A stretch of DNA of 63,761 nt, the filler included, from Octopus bimaculoides (taxonomy: Eukaryota), in assembly GCF_001194135.2 (NCBI RefSeq). It is 6 parts of 5 records of this genome, joined end to end, with 100 filler letters (N's around TTAATTAATTAA, not from the genome) between each part and the next. Parts side by side here need not be neighbours in the genome. Positions count along the whole stretch, not along the records: positions 36,150 to 46,103 come from NW_026332907.1; 5 more parts are not named here. One strand, written 5' to 3'. Positions within the stretch are counted from its first letter, which is position 1, and every line of letters begins with the position of its first letter. Both the position numbers and the translations under genes were made by a program. The notes under the pieces are model-generated. The model made no database searches. It saw nothing but the letters and a program-made list of their open reading frames with translations, and had not been told where the DNA came from. This document shows positions 1-46,840 of this stretch, one piece after another.

Positions 1-144
1 ATATATATATATATATATAATAACATAAATAATATATAAAGATATGCATATATCCATCCATATATGTACATACCTATATGTATACATAAATGCATGTATG
101 GGTACAGGACATCACACACATATATATATGTGTGTGTATATATA

Positions 145-191
<47 letters not shown>

Positions 192-504
192 GTGTGTGTG
201 TGACAAGAAATCTATATAGAGATAGATTTGCAAATCTCATCAGGTTACAGAGACCTGTGCACCCTAAGGTGGAATTTAGAATAGCAACAATCAAACTCAC
301 TCACCGCTAAGAAAAATTTCTAGAATAACATTAGCTACACTTTCTCCCAATTAGCACAAAGCGGTTACACACACACACACACAAACACACTCGCAAGTGC
401 ACATGCACACACACACACACACATATATATATATAAAAGCAGAAAATTAAGGGATCAATATAAAATCAGAAGCGAAAAGGAAATACACTATATAGCGGAA
501 AAAA

Positions 505-7766: not shown

Positions 7767-8040
7767 AAGTGTACCCTTAACGTAGTTCTCGGGGATATTC
7801 AGCGTGACAGAGTGTGACAAGGCTGGCCCTTTGAATTACAGGCACAATAGAAACAGGAAGTAAGAGTGAGAGAAAGTTGTGGTGAAAGAGAACAGCAGGG
7901 TTCACCACCATCCCCTGCTGGAGCCTCGTGGAGCTTTTAGGTGTTTTCGCTCAATAAATACTCACAACGCCCGGTCTGGGAATCGAAACCGCGATCCTAT
8001 GACCGCGAATCCGCTGCCCTAACCACTGGGCCATTGCGGA
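7767..8040 (-). mobile_element. tRNA-derived SINE family D (3' end lost in gap)
   Basis: Minus-strand head cgcaaTGGCCCAGTGGttag...GGTTTCGATTCCcagacc; degraded copy near 55375-55500. Confidence 0.8.
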
Positions 8041-35600: not shown

Positions 35601-37959
35601 GTAGCAAATCAATTATTTTGATTTCAAATTTTTGCACAACTTCAACAAGTTCGAGGGAAAAGATAAGTCGATTATATTGAGCCCAATACTTCACTGGTAC
35701 TTATTTTACCGACCCCAAAAAGATGAAAGGCAAAGTCGACCATGGCGGGTTTTGAGCTCAGAACGTAAAGACTGATGAAATGCTGCTAAGCATTTACCCC
35801 GGCGCACTAATGATTCTGCCTTAGCAAATCAATTATCTTGCCAGAAACACAGATTCTCTTAAGAAAATGAACGCGATATCGTTCAACTGAAATTTGACGC
35901 AAATCAGCAACAAAAATGACCATATCGATAGTGTATTATAACGAACAACCAGAAATGCATGTTACATAGCCACTATTTCAAGGAACTAGCTCACTCACCC
36001 CACTCTCTGTTTCCCCTCTCCCTCTCTCCCTCTCTCCCTCTCCCTCTCTNNNNNNNNNNNNNNNNNNNNNNNNNNNNNNNNNNNNNNNNNNNNTTAATTA
36101 ATTAANNNNNNNNNNNNNNNNNNNNNNNNNNNNNNNNNNNNNNNNNNNNACCAATAGAATAAATACTAGGCTTCCAAAGAATAAGTCCTGGGGTCGATTG
36201 GCTCGACCAAAGGCGGTGCTCCAGCATCGCCGCAGTCCAATGACTGAAGCAAGTAAAAGAGTAAAGAGTAAAGAGAGTGTCTTTGTTATCTTTATTGAAC
36301 TGTTTAAAATTATTGGACGATTATTTTGCGTACACCCTTTTCTTCATAAATTATCAAACAGATATAAATTCATGAAATTTACCCATTTCATATTATATTT
36401 CCATTAGCTCAGTTCTCCCATCAATTTGATAGCAGAGGCATTTCCTGACAAGTTGAACTTAATGCTACAAGACACCGAAAATTATTTTCTCATTATAAAC
36501 TTTCTAATTGTGGAGAGTAAAAATCTAGGACTTGTCTGCTGCTAGAAGACTACATTGGTACTTAAATAGAGCTACAATTTGAGATATATTCCAAAAACCC
36601 TATGCTACCTTTAACCCTGTGTTAATATAACATCTTTATCAATTTCGGCAGTAGATAATACAGCACTATAAAAAAAAAAACAAATAACGCACAACAAATT
36701 GTTTTTAATAAGAAGAACGAGAGTTTATTCAAACTTGGAAATTGGGAAGTGCACATATATGTTAATATTCCTGTAATTCAAATATTATTTGTAAAGCGTA
36801 AATACTATTGTGACAAGAAGCAATATTCTCCAAATTTCCAGATGTAAACTAATCTGATATGGTGAAAATAAGGGGCCACATGCGATGTGAGCGACCAGTA
36901 TGAAGATATCTGCAAACTTTTCAGTTCCTTGTAACTTCCATTTCTTTCCAAAGGTCACTAACAATTGTGTATATCTATAAAAATGAAAATCAGTTTTTTT
37001 TCGATTTTATGTAATACAAATATTGTGCAATTTCTGAGAGCCACAAGTAATGTTATTTCAAAGATATTAGCAATAAAATATATATGTTAATAAAATAAAT
37101 AATTTTGAGGTTGTTTTAATGTTCATTTCAGTTTCAGGGAAATACGTAGAATAATACTAAGTATTATTTAAAGAAAATGCCTAATAGGAATGCATCGGTT
37201 TATTTATTTGCATAAATACTGAATATTGATTATGCAACCATAGCTTTTATATTCATGTATTTTGTGAACAAAATACATGAATATTACAAGTTCATTTCTC
37301 AGAAATTGCACAATAAAATTACAAGTTCATATAGTCTATGTGTATGTGTGGTCGGCTGTGTCTATGTGTGTGTTACTTTTCTGTATATATCCTATTAAAC
37401 TAGTTGCGTTTTCTGGTAGATATTGTGTCAATATCAGTATCAGCGCAATTTTAATTTACTTCTAAAAAATATAATCTTCTACTCTTCTCAATCGTGGCTT
37501 TTCATGAGCATTTTCTTTACGAAACACGTACACTCTCCGTGTTTACATGCATTTAAATTACTTATTAGCTTAACAGAAAATTGTACTATATTGCGCTTTA
37601 CTAGAAAATTCATATTTACAACACTTGTAAACTGTTTACGATTTTAACAAGTTTGCATGATTGACGGAATTGATATCATCAGGTTAAAAAAGTTCAAAAA
37701 CACAATAGGAAATATGTTAAGCATTTTATGGTAATAGCTTTTAATGACTTTACGGCTTACGTACTATATTTAATATTATAAATAAAGCTGAGTCAAGTCA
37801 GTATCATATTTGAGAATACTTAGCATATATAGTATTATATATGCGACTACTAAATAACTACTGGATTACATTATATGTAATGAAACAAGTGGTACCTGCC
37901 ATAGATAAAAAAAGTAAAGACTGAAATATAATACAAAGATGTTGTGACAAAGCAAACAG

Positions 37960-38105
37960 GGTGAACACGTGGTACAAAACCACCAAATATAAAGGAGTGA
38001 TGTTTGTAGAGGCCACGGCCCATGGAGAACTAGCCCGTAGATTTAGGAAAGCTCTGAAGTACACCAAACTCAGCATTAAGATCATTGAAAAGCTAGGGAA
38101 CAGAA
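37960..38105 (+). mobile_element. Penelope-like element RT-endonuclease linker remnant
   Basis: VNTWYKTTKYKGVMFVEATAHGELARRFRKALKYTKLSIKIIEKLG fits the WY....Y.SVMFV.AT..GEL...IKVVE..G pattern. Confidence 0.5.
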
Positions 38106-38532
38106 TAGTTTATTTGAATTTGTGAGTTTATGAGTTTATTGACTGCTGATGGCGTGTGGATATTGCGTGAATGAATTCCTGTGCAATTATTATTTGTGCA
38201 TGTGTTTCTGTCATTATCAGTGAGTGTATTATAAAGCAAATCTATGTATGGCTATGAAGTTCGTATTTGTATGTGCGTAAGTATTCGCGCATTCATTCTT
38301 GTGCGGGATGTTATGCTTCTTTGCGTTATTCGCCAGTTCATTGCGAAATAGACGTGCTATATTCTAGTATTTAGAGATATATGCAGATATGCATTACTGC
38401 AAGATGCTTTTGTAACTGTGTATGCACGTTTATGTTTCCCTCATATATCTGGAGGATATGTTTGGGTTTTTTGGATAGGTGTGGTATGGTTTCATACGGA
38501 AATGGTGAGTGAACATATGTTTATACACTTAT

Positions 38533-38593
<61 letters not shown>

Positions 38594-38696
38594 NNNNNNN
38601 NNNNNNNNNNNNNNNNNNNNNNNNNNNNNNNNNNNNNNNNNNNNNNNNNNNNNNNNNNNNNNNNNNNNNNNNNNNNNNNNNNNNNNNNNNNNNNNN

Positions 38697-38740
<44 letters not shown>

Positions 38741-38968
38741 TGCCTCTGTGTGTGTCCGATATAACAGATGTGTGGTTCATTTACTTGTATGATTTTGTCT
38801 TGCATCTGTACAAGCTTTATGATAGATATGCTTATGAATATGCTCTGAAAGTTAAATAGAGTGTGTGAATATACCGCAGTATGTCTTGTTATTCTGCGCA
38901 TAAGTGTATGCAGAATATTATAGATATTTGTGAGTGTTATCTTGTTACACGGCAAATTGTATATTAAT

Positions 38969-39020
<52 letters not shown>

Positions 39021-39473
39021 TATAAATACATGTGGGCGTACGTGTGTGTGTGTGTACATACGCAAACATGTATGCATGTATGTGCGCATGTAAAGAAAGT
39101 TTGCGAAAAAAAGTTGTCAATACATACAATGATATTGAAGATATTTCATTAACACACTTTCGTGACATATCAATCACGCTAGTCCATTCTTTCTAATCTC
39201 ACTGAAATGTTCGTAGTGTTATCGTTTTCAGTAAGCTTAGGCTTATGGTAACAGCGAAACAGAAAATTGGAAATGTTTTTTGTAAGCGATATGTTAATAG
39301 AATATATGTTGCATTCAGTGTGGGTCGTCCTTATTAATCTTGGCTCTCTTATGTAGAGATGGATATGGATTCAGAACGTCTTCTTGTACTGTTGCATACT
39401 AAAAATTTGCATTCTTGATCACGCTGTTGGTGGGCATGACTGCTTCTCAAAAATCTGTGTACTTACTTACACA

Positions 39474-39479
39474 TTTATT
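39474..39479 (-). terminator. Candidate polyadenylation signal (AATAAA) for the receptor gene
   Basis: First minus-strand AATAAA found downstream, ~225 nt after the stop codon; common by chance in AT-rich DNA. Confidence 0.3.
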
Positions 39480-39519
39480 CATACATGTGTGTGCGTGTTA
39501 GCGTGTGTATATGTATATA

Positions 39520-39557
<38 letters not shown>

Positions 39558-39559
<2 letters not shown>

Positions 39560-39655
39560 TCGCTGACCACTACACATTTTTTCTCCTTGTTTCTTTCTGT
39601 GTTTCATTCAGTTGAAGAGACTTTCTCTATTCCGGAGCGTTATAGTAATACATCC
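39558..39655 (+). mobile_element. Penelope-like pseudo-LTR fragment with hammerhead 3' half deleted
   Basis: Aligns with the reverse complement of ~10440-10562 but lacks the ~21 nt cgtaggctcgaaacgttaaag; lies ~48 nt beyond the receptor stop codon. Confidence 0.7.
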
Positions 39656-39702
39656 ATATATATATGGAATGTTTGGGTGTATTGAGAGTTGCATTATCAT
39701 GT

Positions 39703-40845
39703 CTATAAAGATAATACAACAAAAATCATGTAGATTAACAAAAATATAACAGTGACGAACAAAAAGACGATGTCAAGCTTTTGATATGCATACATATGCT
39801 TCTTAGAGTGAATTGTATTTTTGAAGTTTAACTTCGCATCATAAGGCTGCTCAATAATTCCGATTTTATTTTTTGACCCTGTTTGTTTAAATCTGAATTT
39901 TGGTATTGAATTATTTTTCACTGTAGCCTGGTCGACATACATTCTACACCCAATTATGGAGATAAGTGTAGAAAAGCCGCTGACAAGTGTCAGAATTAAA
40001 AGATATAACAAGTACATTGACATCCCGAGAGACTTCGTACCCAATACTTTGGCCGTTTCTGTCAGATAGACAACATTGGCAAGGAAAATTGTGATTGCAA
40101 CTGAAACCTTCTCTCCCGATTCAGCAGGCAATAAATACACGCCTAAGTTCAGTATTGTCAGCATTATTGGGAATATGAAGTATGTTAATGTTTCACTCAT
40201 AAATTTTCTTTTTGCGAAAATAGTAACACTAGCCGATATGATTTCCTTTTCAGTAACGTTCCCTACAGCAAACTTATATTCCCACTTATCTGCTTCCGCA
40301 TTATGCAAATTGTTAAAAGAAAAGCTTTGCATGGTTTTCTCTATATTCTCCTGATGACCTAAGCAGACGGTAATATTACATTCATGTTCATCTAAAGGAT
40401 ATTTAAGCATGTTAATTGTACAGTGAGTTTGGAAAATTCCATCCATATGTAAAGACACTGATCCGTCATATTTTACAGTGGCTCCTTCTCCTTCATGTTG
40501 AGAAAATTTGCCTGACATATCGTTACATATGGAAACAGTAGGATACCATATGTCATCTACATTTACGCTTATGTAAGTTATATTTTTCATTGTTGTATTC
40601 CACAGCAAGTAGATATCTTTCCATGATAAACCAAGCACAACTTTGCTTGTAAGCAAAGCTTTTTGAATATCTAATTCAATTATTTTAAACATTTCAAGGA
40701 ATACATCTACTTTCACTATGTCTTCATCATTATGGACAGGCCTCTCGCTTTTCGTGTAATTTTGAAGCAACATTGATCGCAGAATGCTTTTCTCAGAAAT
40801 AGCGTTCACATTAACCGCTAGTAATAAGATAGCTATGAATTTCAT
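39703..40845 (-). CDS. Intronless Cys-loop ligand-gated ion channel subunit, atypical nicotinic-acetylcholine-receptor-like; probable cephalopod chemotactile receptor (CR) family member, 380 aa
   Basis: Uninterrupted ORF. Signal peptide MKFIAILLLAVNVNA; nAChR-like motifs ERPV, W-x-D-x-x-L-x-W-N (WKDIYLLWN), IWYPTV; Cys-loop C142-x13-C156 (CTINMLKYPLDEHEC); pre-M1 KRK; M1-M2 LPAESGEKVSVAITIFLA; M3; ~55-aa M3-M4 loop; terminal M4. No loop-C YxCC. Channel fold ~0.97 certain; CR-family assignment ~0.8. Confidence 0.95.
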   Translation of the reverse strand: MKFIAILLLAVNVNAISEKSILRSMLLQNYTKSERPVHNDEDIVKVDVFLEMFKIIELDIQKALLTSKVVLGLSWKDIYLLWNTTMKNITYISVNVDDIWYPTVSICNDMSGKFSQHEGEGATVKYDGSVSLHMDGIFQTHCTINMLKYPLDEHECNITVCLGHQENIEKTMQSFSFNNLHNAEADKWEYKFAVGNVTEKEIISASVTIFAKRKFMSETLTYFIFPIMLTILNLGVYLLPAESGEKVSVAITIFLANVVYLTETAKVLGTKSLGMSMYLLYLLILTLVSGFSTLISIIGCRMYVDQATVKNNSIPKFRFKQTGSKNKIGIIEQPYDAKLNFKNTIHSKKHMYAYQKLDIVFLFVTVIFLLIYMIFVVLSL

Positions 40846-42989
40846 TGTTGTTATATGAAGGTAAACTATTTCTTCCCTTTGTTGGTTTGTTACTTTAAAG
40901 GGCTCAGTAGTTTTCGATTTCTGAATTAACTTGAAACGTTAAATATCCATGTAGAATAAGCATTCCGCTTGACAAAATATAACTGTATATTTTATGCATG
41001 AAAATATGTAAAATATTTGCCTTTGGCAAAAGTGTGTTTCAGAAATGTATAGACAAAAGAAAAGTACGAGCATGCAGACAAGATTTCTCGCTAAGATTGC
41101 ATGAATTCTCTACATTCTGTAGTTGGTAAAATTTTGTGAATATTTTCAGCCAAGTTACAATGAATTAGTTTCTTTCATCTACCGTCGCTCTCAAATGAAG
41201 TTACCTAAACTCATTTGACAGTCATAATTTTCTGTTCTTTGACGCTCTACCCCCTCTCTGTCTCTCCCTATCTCCCTCTCTCTCTCATCTCTTACGTTCT
41301 CATTTTCCGTCTTTGATTATAGCTCCATTCTTTTTAAGCCATGTATTTCTGGATCTTTTTTTAAAATTACAGCATTGTGCTAAGTATTTTTTCTAAGTAT
41401 ATTTAAAAGCCGTTTCAACTACTTTGATTTGAAATACTGAATTATTACTTTATTATTACTGAATCATTTAATTAATAAGGAGCAAGTAAGATAATATTAT
41501 AAAACAAATTCCTCTGAGACTACAAGCGACGGGACATTTGAGATTTACATTGTAACGGTTGTAAGTATAAAATCATGCTTCTTACACTGAATATGCACTG
41601 AGTATCGTTATTGTATTCATTACTTGTTTATAGATCAATTGTCTGCATTTACTTTAACGTTCTCTTTTCCTTTTATGCATTTTGTACAAAAGAATATGCA
41701 TAAGTACATAACAGCATTTCAAACCGATCCCTTATAATATTATTTGCCTAGAAAATACTTTTGTCATTTTTGGCTAACGCATTCAACGAGTTAAAACGTT
41801 CTAAATTGGTCCCAGTAATAATAACAATAAGATTGTTAACAATATAAAATTTTATTTCTTTTCTTTTCCGGACAGCCGAGTAGGCAAGTCCAAATATTTG
41901 TTATCTGACATTCTACTGCTCAAAATGTTAAATTTATATATGAAACACACATGTCTATGCACCTAAGCACGCAGAACTATTTGATTTCCGCACAAACAAA
42001 CGACTAAAATCTATAACAAAATCACGAGATAAATCTGCCACAAAAACAATATATCATAGAGTTCCCTAATGATAAAAAGAGAAATAATCTAGATATCTGG
42101 AGCAGAAAAACAACGTTTTTACTGCGGGTTTTCATTAACATATAGAGAGATAGAAGTGTACAAACACACACACACACATAAACATTCAAGCTCATACACA
42201 TACTTACATACTGATATTCTTTTCTTTATTCGTTTATTCTTTTACTTCTTTCAGTCGTTTGACTGCGGCCATGCTGGAACACCGCCTTTTAGTCGAACCA
42301 ATCGACCCTAGGGGTTTGTAAGCCTAGTACGTATTCTATATGTCTCTTTTGCCGAAACTCTAAGTTACGAGGACGTAAACATACCAGGATCGGTTGTCAA
42401 GTGATGGTGGTGGGACAAACACAGACACACAGACATATGTATGTATGTATGTATGTATGTATGTTTTCTAAGGCAATCGTGTCGTCAAAAATATGTACAT
42501 ACATTTTATATTGAAATAAGTAAATGGACACAGGAAAAGAAATAATGGAATTAACTTTATTCTTTAATTTATTCGCTCTGTCGTTTGATATCATCACAAG
42601 TTATAGCACCTATAGATCAGGGTTTGTGCTGTGTGATGGTGAGGTTTGAATTTCTATCATCGTTTAGCTTATTTAAACTTCGTTGTTTCTCGCTTGTAAA
42701 CATTTGTCGCAAATTTTACTTCTATCGAATTGTTGTACTCTAACCATAGTAAAAACCTTTCACTGTTTTTCACTAACTCAGTTTTCTATACTGACAATTT
42801 TCTTCACTCAATTCTATTCTATTAGTTGTTATATAGATCTTCAAAGCAGCTATGGTATTATGAGGATGTCAATTACTCACCCTGTATCTAAAAATGGTCA
42901 CATGGTTGTTGTTACATAAACGTAAATATTGTCAGACATCCATTTATGACTTTCGTGGGCTTTCTGAAAAATAGTGAAAATTGTTGAAA

Positions 42990-43420
42990 CTCGGTTGGAG
43001 TTCCACTGTGTACTTCAACCATGCTGGGTTTAATAAGTGTGTACAGCAACTCAACGTAACCAGCAGCATAAATCTAAGCCCTTGTAAGAAGATTCGACGT
43101 AGTATGACAGGTTCGTCGTTGTTCTGCTCCCACAGAAGAAGCAATCATTCACATTTGCTGGAAACCTGCGGTGCATAAGTCTGTGGATATCAGAAATGAT
43201 CTGCATATAAGCATTTGTCATTTCTTCTAGACTTTTGAGATTCATCGAAGATTTACCACACCAGAGTAATAATGCAAGCCATATTCGAGATGGTTAATTA
43301 ACCGATAGGCACATATCAAATGTTCTTGTGTTTGTTTTACACATATAAATTGGTCTCTCAATATATACCTATGTCTAATACCCTCGTGTACCACTGTCCT
43401 AATAACCCACTCATACACCT
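42990..43420 (-). mobile_element. Old L2/CR1-like LINE RT C-terminal remnant
   Basis: Minus frames ICAYRLINHLEYGLHYYSG, MNLKSLEE, AEQRRTC echo LY...IRPHLEY.S..W / LE..Q / LE.RR. Confidence 0.4.
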
Positions 43421-43923
43421 GAAGTTATTTGATGATAGAGCTCCCTTATTTCCTATAATCATCATCGATAATATTTTGAACCCTTTGAATGAATCACAGT
43501 GTCCTTATTGAGTCTGAATATTCAGAATGTTTTGGTCTCTTTAATAGAGTTGAATAATTCCCGGCAGAGACTTTCAATTCAATCTAAAATTTGTGCACAA
43601 AAAATCTTGCAAAATTAAAAAAGTTAACAATTTTTAAATCACCGACCTCGTTTATTTGACAACAATGACTGCATGTCTATTAATTTCTTGTATTTGCAAT
43701 TTTATCGCCATGGAGATTATTGAACTGATAATTACGGAAGGATACCTAAAGGAAACTGGGATTTTGCAATATTATATTATTCGTTTAGATTTACATGTTT
43801 ACACTTTTACATGTTTACAATTTTATTGCAATTTGAATTATTCTCCATTTCAAACAATGCCGAGGCCCGGGCGCGTTTTCCTCTATTCGAAGCAATGCTG
43901 AAACCCTTGCGAAGTTTTTGTTT

Positions 43924-44480
43924 TCACATCTTCCACATCGGCAAATTCCTTTCGTCACCATTATTGAACTTCGAGAAAAGGTCCTGACTTACTTCTAACT
44001 TTTCATTCAGTTCACGACAGGCATTCAGTCGTGACTGGTTTTGATCTTCCATGAGTAAGTGAAGCACAAATTTTGCTGCAACTCGTTTCATTCGCAATTT
44101 CTCGCTCAAAATTCGTTGGCGGGAGGTCCAGAACACAACAGTCATATCAAAAAATTCGTCAATTATCTGGTGATGGTCCTCCAAGATGAGTTCATGAATT
44201 TTCATGAAGTTTTCATTCCTTTAGGAGTTCCCCAGTCGTCTTCAGCACGTTTGATCTGTAACTGATAAGTGACCGAACTTAAAGCGTGGTAACCACTCGT
44301 AAACATATGTTTTGCTCATGGAAGCGCACTTGTAAGCTGTTTGAAGCATGAAAACTGTTTCCGCTGCCGTTTTCCTCAGCAGGAAACAGAATTTTATGGA
44401 AGCACGTTGTTCCTTCGTTTCAGCCACCCTAAAAATCGACGAACAGGGGAGAAGGATTGCAAACCAACGATGCTCCACAT
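43924..44480 (-). mobile_element. Defective mariner transposase (5' half)
   Basis: EQRASIKFCFLLRKTAAETVFMLQTAY..MSKTYVYEW..RFKFG, then ILSEKLRMKRVAAKFV.HLL..DQ.QSRLNACREL..GDE. Confidence 0.9.
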
Positions 44481-46840
44481 AGCAGTAGGATTGTATCAGA
44501 CGACGCCAGTCGGCAGACTAATGCCTGAGGTTTGCAGCTGTCCCACTTTATTCCGATGTTTTTTGTTTTGTTTAGGTACGAAGTCATTACATTTAAATGA
44601 ACTCAAGAAGTCGATACCATCGACATTATTATTTACCTCGTACTTATTTGGTCGATAACGAAATTTTAAGGGTGAATATTTGAAATAAGCAAAGTTTGAA
44701 CCAAGAAGATAGATGCATTGATTTAATACAGGTAACTAAATTAAACACAAGTTGCTAACCATTTTAAGTTTATTCTCTCATTTATATGCATTCTATATCT
44801 ATAAAAGCCTTCGAAATACACAGATCATCCATTACAGATTATTATAGCATGTGGATACTTTGCCATACGTTTATTTTATCTCCTGGTTCAAAATTCTTCC
44901 AACTACTAATACTGACGTTACGTGATTTTATTCTAATTCAACATTCGTTCTCAATTCACATATATCTCTAAGAGATGTTATTTTTGCTTTTGAATATCTT
45001 ACACTGAGGCGATTTTATATCTTGTATCAGTTAAGAACAATTGAGAAAGAAAAAAATTAACACATGTGATTCTGTGGGCTAGCATTAAAATGATACAATT
45101 TTGTTAGCTTGAAGGTAAATGTAAATGTGTGTAATCGCGTTGTACATTAAATAGAGAAGTTTCATTTTGATGACAATATTACTACTATACATTTGTGTTT
45201 ATGTATATACGCTGTTGGTTTTATTGCGATTGTAGGTGTGATGAATTTATTAACCTGCGATGATTATATATACATGTTTCCTGTCAAAACTTTCATTTCT
45301 ATTTTATTGTTCCCTCCACGCACTTGATATTTTGTATTCATTTTCAGATTTTATGAACCGTTATTCACTTGGGTTAAACAAACTCGATAACATATGAAAT
45401 ATTCATAGCTAAGTCAGTTATGTATTCAATGAAAAGTATATTTTAATGTATACGTGCTTATTTAACAAACAATAAAATACGATAAGCAAAGAGAGAGAAA
45501 CTGCTAAGCTTCAGCACATTTATTTCTTAATGCATTATGATTGCTATAATGAAATAAAGCAATATATAGCAACAGAGAGAAATGGTATGCCGCTATTGCT
45601 CATTTGTATCTACTTGAAATGCTGTAACCATTTTCCAGAAATGAGTGAAATATTGTAAACACTAATACATTTACTCCAAATTATGAATAGTTATAGAACC
45701 TCGAAATGTAACAGTATCACTTAAACTACAATGTGTCTGTGTGGTTAAGAAGTTTGCTTTGCGAAAACACGGTTTCGGTTTCTAACCCACAGCGCCGCAT
45801 CAGATTCCACTCACCTCTACTGTAGCCACGAGATGACCAAAGCGTTTTGAATGAATTTGGCAGATGGAAACTGTGCAGAAGCCCAACGTATAATTATATT
45901 TGTATAGGGATGTTTGTGTGTCTTTTTTCTTTGTTCCTCACCCCTTGACTACCAGAGATAGTTTGTATGCCAAAGCAGTAATACAACTTTGCTTAAAGAA
46001 ACTAGATACTCAGATACTGCAGTGGATTTGTTAGGGTAAACCATTCAAGGTGAAACAATGTGTGAAACAAGTAAAGTGTGTGCGTGTATATATATATATA
46101 TATNNNNNNNNNNNNNNNNNNNNNNNNNNNNNNNNNNNNNNNNNNNNTTAATTAATTAANNNNNNNNNNNNNNNNNNNNNNNNNNNNNNNNNNNNNNNNN
46201 NNNGGGTAAGGCGAGATACGTAGTAGTACAGAGGAAGAACAAGAGGGGTAAGGCGAGATACGTAGTAGTACAGAGGAAGAACGAGGGGGGGGGGAGAAAG
46301 GAAAGAGAAAGAGATAGAGTAGCGTCGGAGGATAAGTTTACGAACTACTTACAATTTTTGTGAGACGCTGCGTTCAATCATGTAAAAACAAAAGTAAATG
46401 AGTATATGCATATATACGTACAGGTATGTGCATACCGACATCCACCTGTATGTATAGGTGCATATCTGGGTACAGGACATTGCACACAAACGTAGACGAG
46501 AACACACATGTCATGGTCTCGTATGGTACGGCCAGTTAATAGAAGACTGTTATATAGTGAAAGTCTTCAAAATTTCCATGTTTTTAATCGAACACATCGA
46601 CATCAGCTCTTCTGTTTTTTTGTGCCTGGTACTTCTTTTATTGAAAGTCACTGGAATGGCATGTCCTGTAGAGTTTCTACAGAAGATTAGCCTCTTAGGA
46701 ACAGAAAAGATTATCAGGGAGGTTTTGAGTATTTGACGGATTATTGAAAGTTTGCGAATATCTAAAATTACAGTTAGGAAACCGCTACCCACATAAATTC
46801 CACCGAGTTGAACAACAAAAATAATATTACTGGTTTTCAA

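What the first reader, a model, noticed from the sequence alone, without database searches (positions are those of the whole stretch)
39703..40845. Lone intact gene is a probable octopus chemotactile ('taste-by-touch') receptor paralog
Seen: a single-exon 380-aa pentameric-channel subunit with signal peptide, Cys-loop, four TM helices and a short M3-M4 loop. Established: octopus sucker chemotactile receptors are divergent nAChR-derived channels that lack the ACh-binding signature and respond to poorly soluble compounds such as terpenoids (van Giesen et al. 2020; Allard et al. and Kang et al. 2023). Inference: this ORF belongs to that family. Few paralogs have known ligands, so it may be an orphan sensory receptor.
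Basis: partly seen in the sequence, partly recalled or inferred. Interest (0 to 1): 0.9.

Follow-up and report, generated by a model that had tools for sequence, protein, structure and literature searches.

The report
Octopus chemotactile receptor family gene
This is an intact, intron-free Octopus bimaculoides gene for one subunit of the already described "taste-by-touch" chemotactile receptor family; it is an ordinary, uncharacterised member whose predicted ligand pocket differs from that of the one well-studied receptor, CRT1.

Summary
Window 39703-40845 (minus strand) is one uninterrupted 380-codon ORF. It encodes a pentameric ligand-gated channel subunit with a signal peptide, a Cys-loop (C142-C156), four TM helices and a roughly 45-residue M3-M4 loop. 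The piece is the unplaced O. bimaculoides contig LGKD02038026.1.

- The best solved relative is octopus CRT1 (172.8 bits, against 101 or less for canonical nAChRs).
- An NJ tree puts the gene in a clade with CRT1 and squid-CRB1-like proteins (81% bootstrap).
- It lacks the ACh aromatic box and the loop-C Cys-Cys.
- It shares with CRT1 an extra Cys pair (C107/C161).
- It is intronless.
- Its O. sinensis orthologue sits in a tandem, same-strand array of paralogues.
- The ORF is intact in three octopus species, with dN/dS of 0.25-0.34.

The pore keeps the cation-channel signature. However, the four aromatic CRT1 ligand-contact residues align to V70, H133, D135 and I202, and D135 and H164 are conserved across this subfamily. 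Terpenoid tuning therefore cannot be assumed.

Expression and ligands were not testable here. The 26-member family was enumerated from this same genome, so the gene is almost certainly already counted. Only truncated public gene models of the locus were found (268 and 295 aa). Interest is low.

The parts
39703..40845 (-). Complete single-exon coding sequence (380 codons plus TAG stop) of a chemotactile-receptor-family pLGIC subunit
   Evidence: ORF list. Full-length alignment to CRT1, 8eis_A, E = 8.7e-50. The O. sinensis orthologue has the same 380-aa single ORF.
40798..40845 (-). Predicted signal peptide (residues 1 to about 16, MKFIAILLLAVNVNAI)
   Evidence: Hydrophobic window 4-22. M1 is invariant and the N-terminal hydrophobic segment recurs in 14 paralogues. 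The 8EIS CRT1 chain aligns from query residue 18 onward. The cleavage site itself is inferred.
40201..40797 (-). Extracellular ligand-binding domain (residues 17-215), with sequons at N29, N83, N88, N157 and N196
   Evidence: Pfam PF02931, 102.9 bits over residues 24-160. Beta-sandwich secondary structure in the model. Sequons.
40378..40422 (-). Cys-loop, C142 to C156 (CTINMLKYPLDEHEC)
   Evidence: Both cysteines are present in 136 of 138 aligned family members.
40525..40527 (-). C107, at the loop-A position of the nAChR Tyr93; first half of an extra Cys pair shared with CRT1 (C96)
   Evidence: C107 and C161 occur together in exactly 27 of 138 sequences: the window protein, its 18 subfamily relatives, CRT1 and seven other members of the CRT1-containing clade. 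A disulfide between them is inferred, not shown.
40363..40365 (-). C161, two residues before the loop-B Trp149 position (G163 here); second half of the extra Cys pair (CRT1 C150)
39934..40197 (-). Transmembrane helices M1-M3 (residues 217-304)
   Evidence: Pfam PF02932 match over residues 227-298. Model helices 217-236, 244-268 and 277-313.
40042..40122 (-). Pore-lining M2 with cation-channel signature: E242 (-4'), G244-E245-K246 (E at -1'), L255 (9'), E263 (17')
   Evidence: Read from the sequence. G244, E245, K246 and L255 are invariant or nearly invariant across the CR clade. There is no Pro-Ala-Arg anion motif.
39796..39933 (-). Short intracellular M3-M4 loop (residues 305-350)
   Evidence: pLDDT below 50 and no secondary structure over 308-351. 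Highest dN/dS of the long segments (0.55 against O. sinensis; the short M4 segment, with very few sites, gives 0.79).
39706..39795 (-). M4 helix to the C-terminus (residues 351-380); missing from both public gene models of this locus
   Evidence: Kyte-Doolittle window 351-380. Model helix 345-379. Aligns to CRT1 M4. P0002 and P0020 lack it.

Best explanation
The ORF is a functional, intronless gene of Octopus bimaculoides for one subunit of the cephalopod chemotactile receptor (CR) family. This family is a lineage of nicotinic-receptor-derived pentameric cation channels that no longer bind acetylcholine. The gene belongs to an octopus-specific subfamily that arose by tandem duplication within the CR gene array.

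Inferred mechanism. Five subunits assemble around a cation-permeable pore, either as a homomer or, as reported for CRs, mixed with other CR subunits. A small molecule met on contact binds at the extracellular subunit interface and opens the pore, which depolarises a sensory cell.

Shown here: fold, family placement, loss of the ACh-binding residues, an intact pore signature, purifying selection, and the genomic organisation.

Inferred only: the expressing cell type, homomeric versus heteromeric assembly, and the ligand. The aligned pocket is more polar (E51, H133, D135, H164, E201) than the aromatic pocket of CRT1. The ligand class is therefore probably not the same as CRT1's.
For: Identity of the locus. 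The piece is contig LGKD02038026.1 of assembly GCA_001194135.2, 9,954 bp.

Homology.
- CRT1 scores 172.8 bits and E = 8.7e-50 over the full length, against 101 bits for the best canonical nAChR.
- In Foldseek the top hit is 8eis_A, with a target-normalised TM-score of 0.71.
- By contrast, a bivalve nAChR-like protein from the neighbouring clade (P0083) hits canonical alpha3/alpha6 best, with no CR chain among its 55 matches at E <= 1e-30.

Tree (NJ, 172 sequences, 363 columns, 200 bootstraps).
- Window gene + O. sinensis + a third octopus species: 100%.
- The 19-member octopus subfamily: 100%.
- A 58-member clade holding this subfamily, CRT1 and its paralogues, and the CRB1-like group: 81%.
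- P0035, in that clade, scores 292.9 bits to squid CRB1.

Loss of the ACh site. Trp55 aligns to V70, Tyr93 to C107 and Trp149 to G163, and there is no Cys-Cys in loop C.

Shared derived Cys pair. C107/C161 occur together in 27 of 138 sequences, all of them inside the CRT1-containing clade of the first tree.

Gene structure and arrangement.
- The coding sequence is intronless, as are P0022, P0007 and P0011. Those three lie on one strand within 340 kb of chromosome CM046615.1.
- CRs are described as intronless (PMC13174522).

Synteny. The whole piece is colinear with O. sinensis CM016874.1. There the orthologue lies between two same-strand paralogues, P0019 about 15 kb upstream and P0004 7.3 kb downstream.

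Selection.
- The ORF is 380, 380 and 381 aa in three species.
- dN/dS is 0.34 and 0.25 overall, and 0.21 in the extracellular domain.
- From the 66 substitutions counted, the coding sequence is about 94% identical between O. bimaculoides and O. sinensis, against 82-87% for the flanks.

Pore. The E242 / G-E-K / L255 signature is conserved.

Family properties are taken from bioRxiv 10.1101/2025.03.03.641191, bioRxiv 10.1101/2025.10.28.685082 and PMC11526382.
Against: - There is no expression evidence. The matching Logan contigs carry genomic flanks, so they are not transcripts.
- There are no functional data for this paralogue or for any member of its subfamily.
- Within the 58-member clade the branching order of the three groups is unresolved (27% support). 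The subfamily could lie just outside the last common ancestor of CRT1 and CRB1.
- The tree is neighbour-joining on corrected p-distances, not maximum likelihood.
- The four aromatic residues that coordinate all CRT1 ligands (Y58, W122, F124, F192) align to V70, H133, D135 and I202. The 'flat hydrophobic pocket' said to be common to CRs is therefore not evident from the alignment.
- The AlphaFold model is of low confidence (pLDDT 58), so the pocket could not be examined in three dimensions.
- The contig is unplaced in the O. bimaculoides assembly.
Confidence: 0.8

Rival explanations
1. It is a CR-clade subunit that does not form a ligand-gated receptor on its own. It would work only as a partner in heteromeric CR channels, tuning the ligand range, conductance or trafficking of other CRs.
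For: CR subunits are reported to combine into many multimeric complexes, and only some can be studied alone in expression systems (bioRxiv 10.1101/2025.03.03.641191; bioRxiv 10.1101/2025.10.28.685082). The subfamily keeps a conserved D135/H164 pair where CRT1 has hydrophobic ligand-contact residues. That pattern would fit a conserved interface role as well as it fits ligand recognition.
Against: Nothing in the sequence separates obligate partners from homomer-forming subunits. All pore and Cys-loop elements needed for a homomer are present.
Confidence: 0.25
2. It is a CR-clade gene with a non-chemotactile job, for example a receptor for an internal signal in neurons, glands or reproductive tissue rather than in sucker epithelium.
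For: Expression was not tested. The pocket chemistry differs from CRT1. Related 'CR-like' nAChR-derived clades of unknown function exist across molluscs (PMC13174522).
Against: It lies, through its orthologue, in the same kind of tandem array as CRT1-like genes. It also shares the family's derived features. CR transcripts as a group are enriched in suckers and the hectocotylus (bioRxiv 10.1101/2025.10.28.685082).
Confidence: 0.12
3. It is a recently inactivated or never-expressed copy, or an assembly haplotig, and makes no functional contribution.
For: The contig is unplaced. Frameshifted CR-like fragments lie next to intact CR genes in the array, so gene death does occur in this family. Public gene predictors failed to model the locus completely.
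Against: The ORF is intact and of conserved length in three species, with dN/dS of 0.25-0.34 and a coding sequence more conserved than its flanks. No identical product is recorded on any other contig of the assembly.
Confidence: 0.05
4. It is a conventional acetylcholine-gated nicotinic receptor subunit.
For: Automatic annotations name its relatives 'acetylcholine receptor subunit ...-like'. It carries the Pfam nAChR-superfamily domains.
Against: - The aromatic-box residues and the loop-C Cys-Cys are absent.
- It scores 70 bits lower to any nAChR than to CRT1.
- It is intronless with a 45-residue M3-M4 loop.
- It clusters apart from alpha-type sequences.
Confidence: 0.02

Closest known systems
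Octopus bimaculoides CRT1 (CR518; PDB 8EIS, 9E6B-D, 9YI4)
   Same: - Same species and same nAChR-derived pLGIC fold.
- Full-length collinear alignment.
- Similar length: 380 aa here, 410 aa for the full-length 9E6B chain.
- Short M3-M4 loop; close CRT1 paralogues such as P0022 are single-exon genes.
- No ACh aromatic box, and the same extra Cys pair at the loop A and loop B positions.
- The same E/GEK/9'-Leu pore signature.
   Different: - Only about 32% identical, and in a different, octopus-specific subfamily.
- CRT1 ligand-contact residues Y39, Y58, W122, F124, L153, S169, L191 and F192 align to E51, V70, H133, D135, H164, L180, E201 and I202.
- The Ca2+-permeation residue E104 aligns to S115 or Q116.
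- Ligands are unknown.
Squid CRB1 (PDB 8EIZ) and CRB1-like proteins
   Same: A CRB1-like protein (P0035) falls in the same 81%-supported cephalopod clade. It has the same overall architecture.
   Different: More distant: 92.9 bits. Three of the four CRB1-like sequences lack the C107/C161 pair. CRB1 is reported to be a bitter-tastant receptor of squid suckers (PMC10338036, citing Kang et al. 2023).
Canonical nicotinic acetylcholine receptor subunits (e.g. human alpha7, alpha4beta2, Torpedo)
   Same: Same superfamily, Cys-loop, four-TM topology and cation-selective M2 signature.
   Different: - The window protein lacks Trp55, Tyr93 and Trp149, and has no loop-C Cys-Cys.
- Its intracellular loop is much shorter.
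- It is intronless.
- About 20-25% identity in the structural alignments.
Lophotrochozoan orphan nAChR-like expansions (e.g. Alvinella Alpo4; bivalve and gastropod 'CR-like' clades)
   Same: These too are nAChR-derived subunits without the ACh-binding motif and with unknown agonists (PMC10338036; PMC13174522).
   Different: They fall outside the CRT1/CRB1 clade in the tree. The bivalve example P0083 matches canonical nAChRs best, not CRT1. None of the sequences outside the CRT1-containing clade carries the C107/C161 pair.

Membership tests
Cephalopod chemotactile receptors (CRs) | nAChR-type pentameric ligand-gated channel subunit (extracellular domain with Cys-loop, four TM helices) | tested here: met
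   PF02931 at 102.9 bits. PF02932 at 25.1 bits, slightly below its cut-off, as in the paralogue P0004. Full-length alignment to CRT1. Model topology.
Cephalopod chemotactile receptors (CRs) | Phylogenetically within the cephalopod clade that holds the characterised CRs, apart from canonical nAChRs and other molluscan expansions | tested here: met
   NJ clade of 58 sequences with CRT1 and a CRB1-like protein, 81% bootstrap. Caveats: the method is NJ, not ML; the order of the three sub-groups is unresolved; the published list of 26 CRs could not be included.
Cephalopod chemotactile receptors (CRs) | Loss of the acetylcholine-binding signature | tested here: met
   V70, C107 and G163 stand at the Trp55, Tyr93 and Trp149 positions, and there is no Cys-Cys in loop C.
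Cephalopod chemotactile receptors (CRs) | Intronless coding sequence (PMC13174522, citing van Giesen et al. 2020) | tested here: met
   A single ORF spans the whole protein. The same holds in O. sinensis and for P0022, P0007 and P0011.
Cephalopod chemotactile receptors (CRs) | Located in a tandem array of CR genes | tested here: met
   Met through the orthologue. The piece is colinear with O. sinensis CM016874.1, where same-strand paralogues flank the gene. The O. bimaculoides contig itself is unplaced. Its subfamily relatives P0007 and P0011 lie within 340 kb of the CRT1 paralogue P0022.
Cephalopod chemotactile receptors (CRs) | Relatively flat hydrophobic orthosteric pocket suited to poorly soluble ligands (bioRxiv 10.1101/2025.10.28.685082) | tested here: inconclusive
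   By alignment, CRT1's aromatic contact residues are V70, H133, D135 and I202 here, with E51, H164 and E201 nearby. However, these positions are reported to be under diversifying selection in the family, and the 3D model is too poor (pLDDT 58) to judge pocket shape or polarity.
Cephalopod chemotactile receptors (CRs) | Expression in sucker (or hectocotylus) sensory epithelium | not testable with these tools
   No transcriptome mapping is available. The Logan contigs that carry the orthologue are genomic.
Cephalopod chemotactile receptors (CRs) | Gated by contact chemicals and not by acetylcholine | not testable with these tools
   This needs electrophysiology.
Cephalopod chemotactile receptors (CRs) | Being one of the 26 published O. 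bimaculoides CRs | not testable with these tools
   van Giesen 2020, Allard 2023 and Kang 2023 are not held, and no supplements are held. Indirect evidence: the word-limited searches found about 10 CRT1-like and 7 subfamily proteins from O. bimaculoides. A total of 26 therefore probably needs this subfamily.
Canonical nicotinic acetylcholine receptor subunits | Aromatic box for ACh (loops A, B, D) and, in alpha subunits, the loop-C vicinal cysteines | tested here: not met
   see above.

The most novel reading that the evidence does not exclude
The octopus-specific subfamily to which this gene belongs has a nearly invariant Asp135/His164 pair and none of CRT1's four aromatic ligand-contact residues. 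It may therefore recognise a different chemical class from the hydrophobic terpenoid, steroid and beta-carboline ligands of CRT1, for example polar or cationic contact cues. Alternatively it may act as a dedicated heteromeric partner subunit. Either reading would widen the known coding logic of octopus taste-by-touch.
Probability: 0.3. Interest if true: 0.5.

Novelty: already known. Interest (0 to 1): 0.22.

Why it matters
The CR family is a well-known recent example of neurotransmitter receptors turned into sensory receptors. Ligands are published for very few of the 26 O. bimaculoides members, so any intact paralogue is a candidate for de-orphanisation.

This work adds three practical points:
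- The correct full-length gene model. The public models found (268 and 295 aa) lack M4, and the O. sinensis RefSeq model carries a spurious-looking N-terminal extension.
- Evidence that the gene is under purifying selection and has 1:1 orthologues in other octopuses.
- A testable observation that its subfamily has a conserved polar Asp/His pair where CRT1 has hydrophobic ligand-contact residues.

None of this changes the current picture of the family.

Tried and rejected
- Primary CR papers. van Giesen 2020, Allard 2023, Kang 2023 and the Current Biology primer are not held. No supplements are held for the two papers that might list CR accessions. Text searches for CR518, CR840, Ocbimv22 and A0A0L8FXG6 gave nothing usable. 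I therefore could not check whether this gene is on the published list of 26.
- Profile search with alignment A2. It was capped at 8,000 word-sharing candidates and did not even recover the CRT1-like proteins, so it could not be used to count family members.
- Second PDB search. I set the E-value cut-off too strict and missed the alpha4 alignment I wanted. I derived the aromatic-box positions from a multiple alignment instead.
- AlphaFold2 with a 14-sequence alignment. It gave only pLDDT 58 and pTM 0.38. That is adequate for topology and for a fold search, but not for pocket geometry or for checking the C107-C161 distance.
- P0083. I guessed it might be squid CRB1 because its length matched, but it is a Pinctada nAChR-like protein. 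It served as a useful negative control.
- Canonical nAChR reading. Considered and rejected (see rival explanations).
- Logan contigs as expression evidence. Rejected, because they include homologous genomic flanks.
Full report
**1. What is in the sequence**

The finding's piece (window 36150-46103) is 9,954 bases at about 33% G+C, with one 103-N gap. It is identical in length to contig LGKD02038026.1 of the Octopus bimaculoides assembly GCA_001194135.2, and it carries the same gene call as that contig, an unplaced one.

The ORF list shows one long frame, 39703..40845 on the minus strand, 380 codons from ATG to TAG. Every other ORF of 60 aa or more is short, is made of microsatellite translations, or belongs to a decayed transposon. 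With the local stop-codon frequency of 0.072, a 380-codon open frame is expected about 1e-8 times in the piece. tblastn with the protein finds no second receptor-like stretch in the piece.

**2. Anatomy of the protein**

- Pfam gives Neur_chan_LBD at 102.9 bits. Neur_chan_memb scores 25.1 bits over M1-M3, just under the curated 28.1.
- The sub-threshold membrane score is not peculiar to this gene. The paralogue P0004 scores 23.7 bits, P0007 scores 35.2 and CRT1 itself 47.5.
- The Cys-loop is C142-x13-C156 with YPLD at its centre.
- A hydropathy scan finds the signal peptide, M1, M3 and M4.
- An AlphaFold2 model is of low confidence (mean pLDDT 58). It still gives the expected N-terminal helix, a beta sandwich and four helices at 217-236, 244-268, 277-313 and 345-379, with a disordered loop between 308 and 351.
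- M2 reads E242-S-G-E245-K-VSVAITIF-L255-ANVVYLTE. That gives glutamates at -4' and -1' and leucine at 9', with no Pro-Ala-Arg motif. This is the signature of cation-selective nicotinic-type channels (established knowledge of pLGIC selectivity filters). These residues are invariant or nearly so across the clade.

**3. Which family**

PDB sequence search:
- The two best chains are octopus CRT1 (8eis_A at 172.8 bits and E = 8.7e-50; 9e6b_A at 172.2 bits), aligned from residue 14-18 to residue 378.
- The best canonical nAChR chain scores 101 bits and squid CRB1 scores 92.9.
- Foldseek with the model also ranks 8eis_A first.

A full HMMER scan of 1.84 billion cluster representatives shows a steep drop in score:
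- 614 bits for a truncated model of the locus itself;
- 495, 293 and 231 bits for representatives of the same octopus subfamily;
- 174 bits for P0022, a CRT1 paralogue, followed by a continuum.

I built NJ trees on MAFFT alignments with 200 bootstraps:
- In the first tree (138 sequences), the window protein, its O. sinensis orthologue and a third octopus species group at 100%. A 19-member subfamily whose members of known origin are all Octopus has 100% support. That subfamily joins the CRT1 side in a 31-member clade at 72%.
- After adding 33 more sequences found with CRT1 as the query, the joint clade has 58 members and 81% support.
- It contains CRT1 (P0179), its many octopus paralogues, and a 100%-supported group that includes P0035. 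P0035 scores 292.9 bits to squid CRB1.
- The named bivalve, chiton and gastropod proteins all fall outside it. One of them, Pinctada P0083, matches canonical alpha3/alpha6 receptors best, with no CR chain among its 55 matches.
- Within the clade the order of the three groups is unresolved (27%).

**4. Diagnostic residues**

In the 138-sequence alignment, the positions of the nicotinic aromatic box are V70 (Trp55), C107 (Tyr93) and G163 (Trp149). There is no Cys-Cys between the Cys-loop and M1. The position mapping rests on established nAChR numbering.

C107 and a second cysteine, C161, occur together in exactly 27 of the 138 sequences. These are the window protein, its 18 subfamily relatives, CRT1 and seven other sequences, and all 27 lie inside the 31-member CRT1-containing clade. 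Such strict co-occurrence suggests a second disulfide linking loops A and B. That is an inference, because the model is too poor to measure the distance.

**5. Genomic organisation and selection**

- The O. sinensis orthologue is a single ORF of exactly 380 aa and 90.5% identity (L001:16098-17240).
- It lies between two same-strand paralogues: P0019 about 15 kb upstream, and P0004 (62% identical, the sister group in the tree) 7.3 kb downstream.
- The whole 9.95-kb piece is colinear with that region at 82-87% identity in the flanks. From the 66 substitutions counted, the coding sequence is about 94% identical.
- Nei-Gojobori dN/dS is 0.34 against O. sinensis and 0.25 against the third species (381 aa, 80% identity). 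It is 0.21 in the extracellular domain and higher in the M3-M4 loop and M4.
- In O. bimaculoides, the CRT1 paralogue P0022 and the subfamily members P0007 and P0011 are all single-exon genes. They lie on one strand at 38.05, 38.17 and 38.39 Mb of chromosome CM046615.1.
- Frameshifted receptor fragments lie beside two of them.

This is the pattern of a chemoreceptor array evolving by tandem duplication with birth and death of copies. It matches the description of CRs as intronless (PMC13174522).

**6. How it most likely works**

By homology it is a subunit of a pentameric cation channel. The channel is gated from the extracellular subunit interface by something other than acetylcholine.

Published work on the family states the following:
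- CRs are enriched in sucker sensory cells.
- They form homo- and heteropentamers.
- They are activated by poorly soluble molecules on contact (bioRxiv 10.1101/2025.03.03.641191; PMC11526382).
- Five CRs were screened against lipids, and only CRT1 responded to sex steroids (bioRxiv 10.1101/2025.10.28.685082).

For this paralogue none of that could be tested.

The residues published as ligand contacts of CRT1 can be mapped through two independent alignments, phmmer and MAFFT:

| CRT1 residue | Window protein |
|---|---|
| Y39 | E51 |
| Y58 | V70 |
| W122 | H133 |
| F124 | D135 |
| L153 | H164 |
| S169 | L180 |
| L191 | E201 |
| F192 | I202 |
| E104 (vestibule, Ca2+ permeation) | S115 or Q116 |

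D135 (Asp in 11 of 14 subfamily members, Asn in two, Glu in one) and H164 (His in all but P0018, which has Arg) are conserved across the aligned subfamily members. Position 133 is His, Tyr or Phe in all but P0018. The pocket therefore looks more polar than CRT1's. Pocket residues are reported to be the fastest-evolving part of CRs (PMC11526382), so this difference does not argue against membership.

**7. Novelty**

The family is known, and it was enumerated from this species' genome: 26 members (bioRxiv 10.1101/2025.03.03.641191) or 'up to 26' (PMC11526382). A later study collected 235 receptors from 30 cephalopod genomes (bioRxiv 10.1101/2025.10.28.685082).

The locus is already in public databases, but only as truncated models:
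- A0A0L8FXG6 (295 aa) is identical to residues 25-301. It then joins a spurious exon about 3 kb downstream, at roughly window 36614-36664.
- The other model is 268 aa.
- The exact 380-aa product is not in the 15-billion-protein collection.

I could not obtain the published list of 26 to confirm that the gene is on it. The searches I could run found about 10 CRT1-like and 7 subfamily proteins from O. bimaculoides. A total of 26 almost certainly includes this subfamily. I therefore rate the finding as already known. A minority possibility remains that this particular copy was overlooked because of its broken gene model and unplaced contig.

**8. Verdict**

Function is inferred. Interest is low (0.22).

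The one mildly interesting lead is the conserved polar Asp/His pair in this subfamily's pocket. It predicts either a ligand class different from CRT1's or a role as a heteromeric partner.

Noticed in passing
window 43924-44478 (-): Decayed mariner/Mos1-type transposon remnant about 3 kb upstream of the receptor gene. The ORF at 44242-44478 hits Pfam HTH_48 (HTH domain of Mos1 transposase) at 22 bits, just under the cut-off of 24.1. The adjoining ORF at 43924-44205 reads like the next part of such a transposase but gave no Pfam hit. The O. sinensis alignment spans the whole remnant and the third species' alignment reaches only its 5' part (to window 44330), so the insertion predates the split of at least the first two species.
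   Followed up: partly
window 38535-38755, 38973-39018, 39508-39557, 42436-42464: Microsatellites: (TG)n on both sides of a 103-N assembly gap (38594-38696), two (TA)n runs, and a (TATG)n run. They produce the long artefactual Cys/Val, His/Thr and Tyr/Ile 'ORFs' in the ORF list.
   Followed up: yes
window 36614-36664 (-) and 39934-39945 (-): The UniProt model A0A0L8FXG6 (295 aa) leaves the true ORF after residue 301. It then joins a short stretch about 3 kb downstream, replacing the M3-M4 loop and M4 with 'IAVLSTAEIDKDVILTQG'. A second model stops at residue 268. Both look like gene-prediction artefacts, because the contiguous ORF is conserved to its end in other species.
   Followed up: yes
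L001 10001-16097 (O. sinensis CM016874.1): RefSeq XP_029646610.1 adds 76 N-terminal residues to the orthologue, drawn from an exon about 6 kb upstream, with a weak DUF8422 hit. The extension precedes the conserved signal-peptide Met and is probably a mis-model or a 5'-UTR exon read in frame.
   Followed up: partly
L007 3546-4362 and L008 17967-19063 (O. bimaculoides CM046615.1): Frameshifted, partial CR-like sequences lie 6-8 kb from the intact CR genes P0007 and P0011. Each gives three tblastn pieces that cannot all share one reading frame. These are likely pseudogenes and indicate birth-and-death turnover in the array.
   Followed up: partly
L006, L007, L008 (O. bimaculoides CM046615.1, 38.05-38.39 Mb): A CRT1 paralogue (P0022) and two members of the window gene's subfamily (P0007, P0011) are all single-exon genes on the same strand within about 340 kb. 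The two subfamilies therefore share one genomic array.
   Followed up: yes
proteins P0035, P0203, P0204 (ENA contig of 168,729 bp): A CRB1-like protein and two proteins from the CRT1-side group are each recorded on a contig of the same length in an ENA assembly. This is probably one tandem array in another cephalopod genome. The species was not identified.
   Followed up: no
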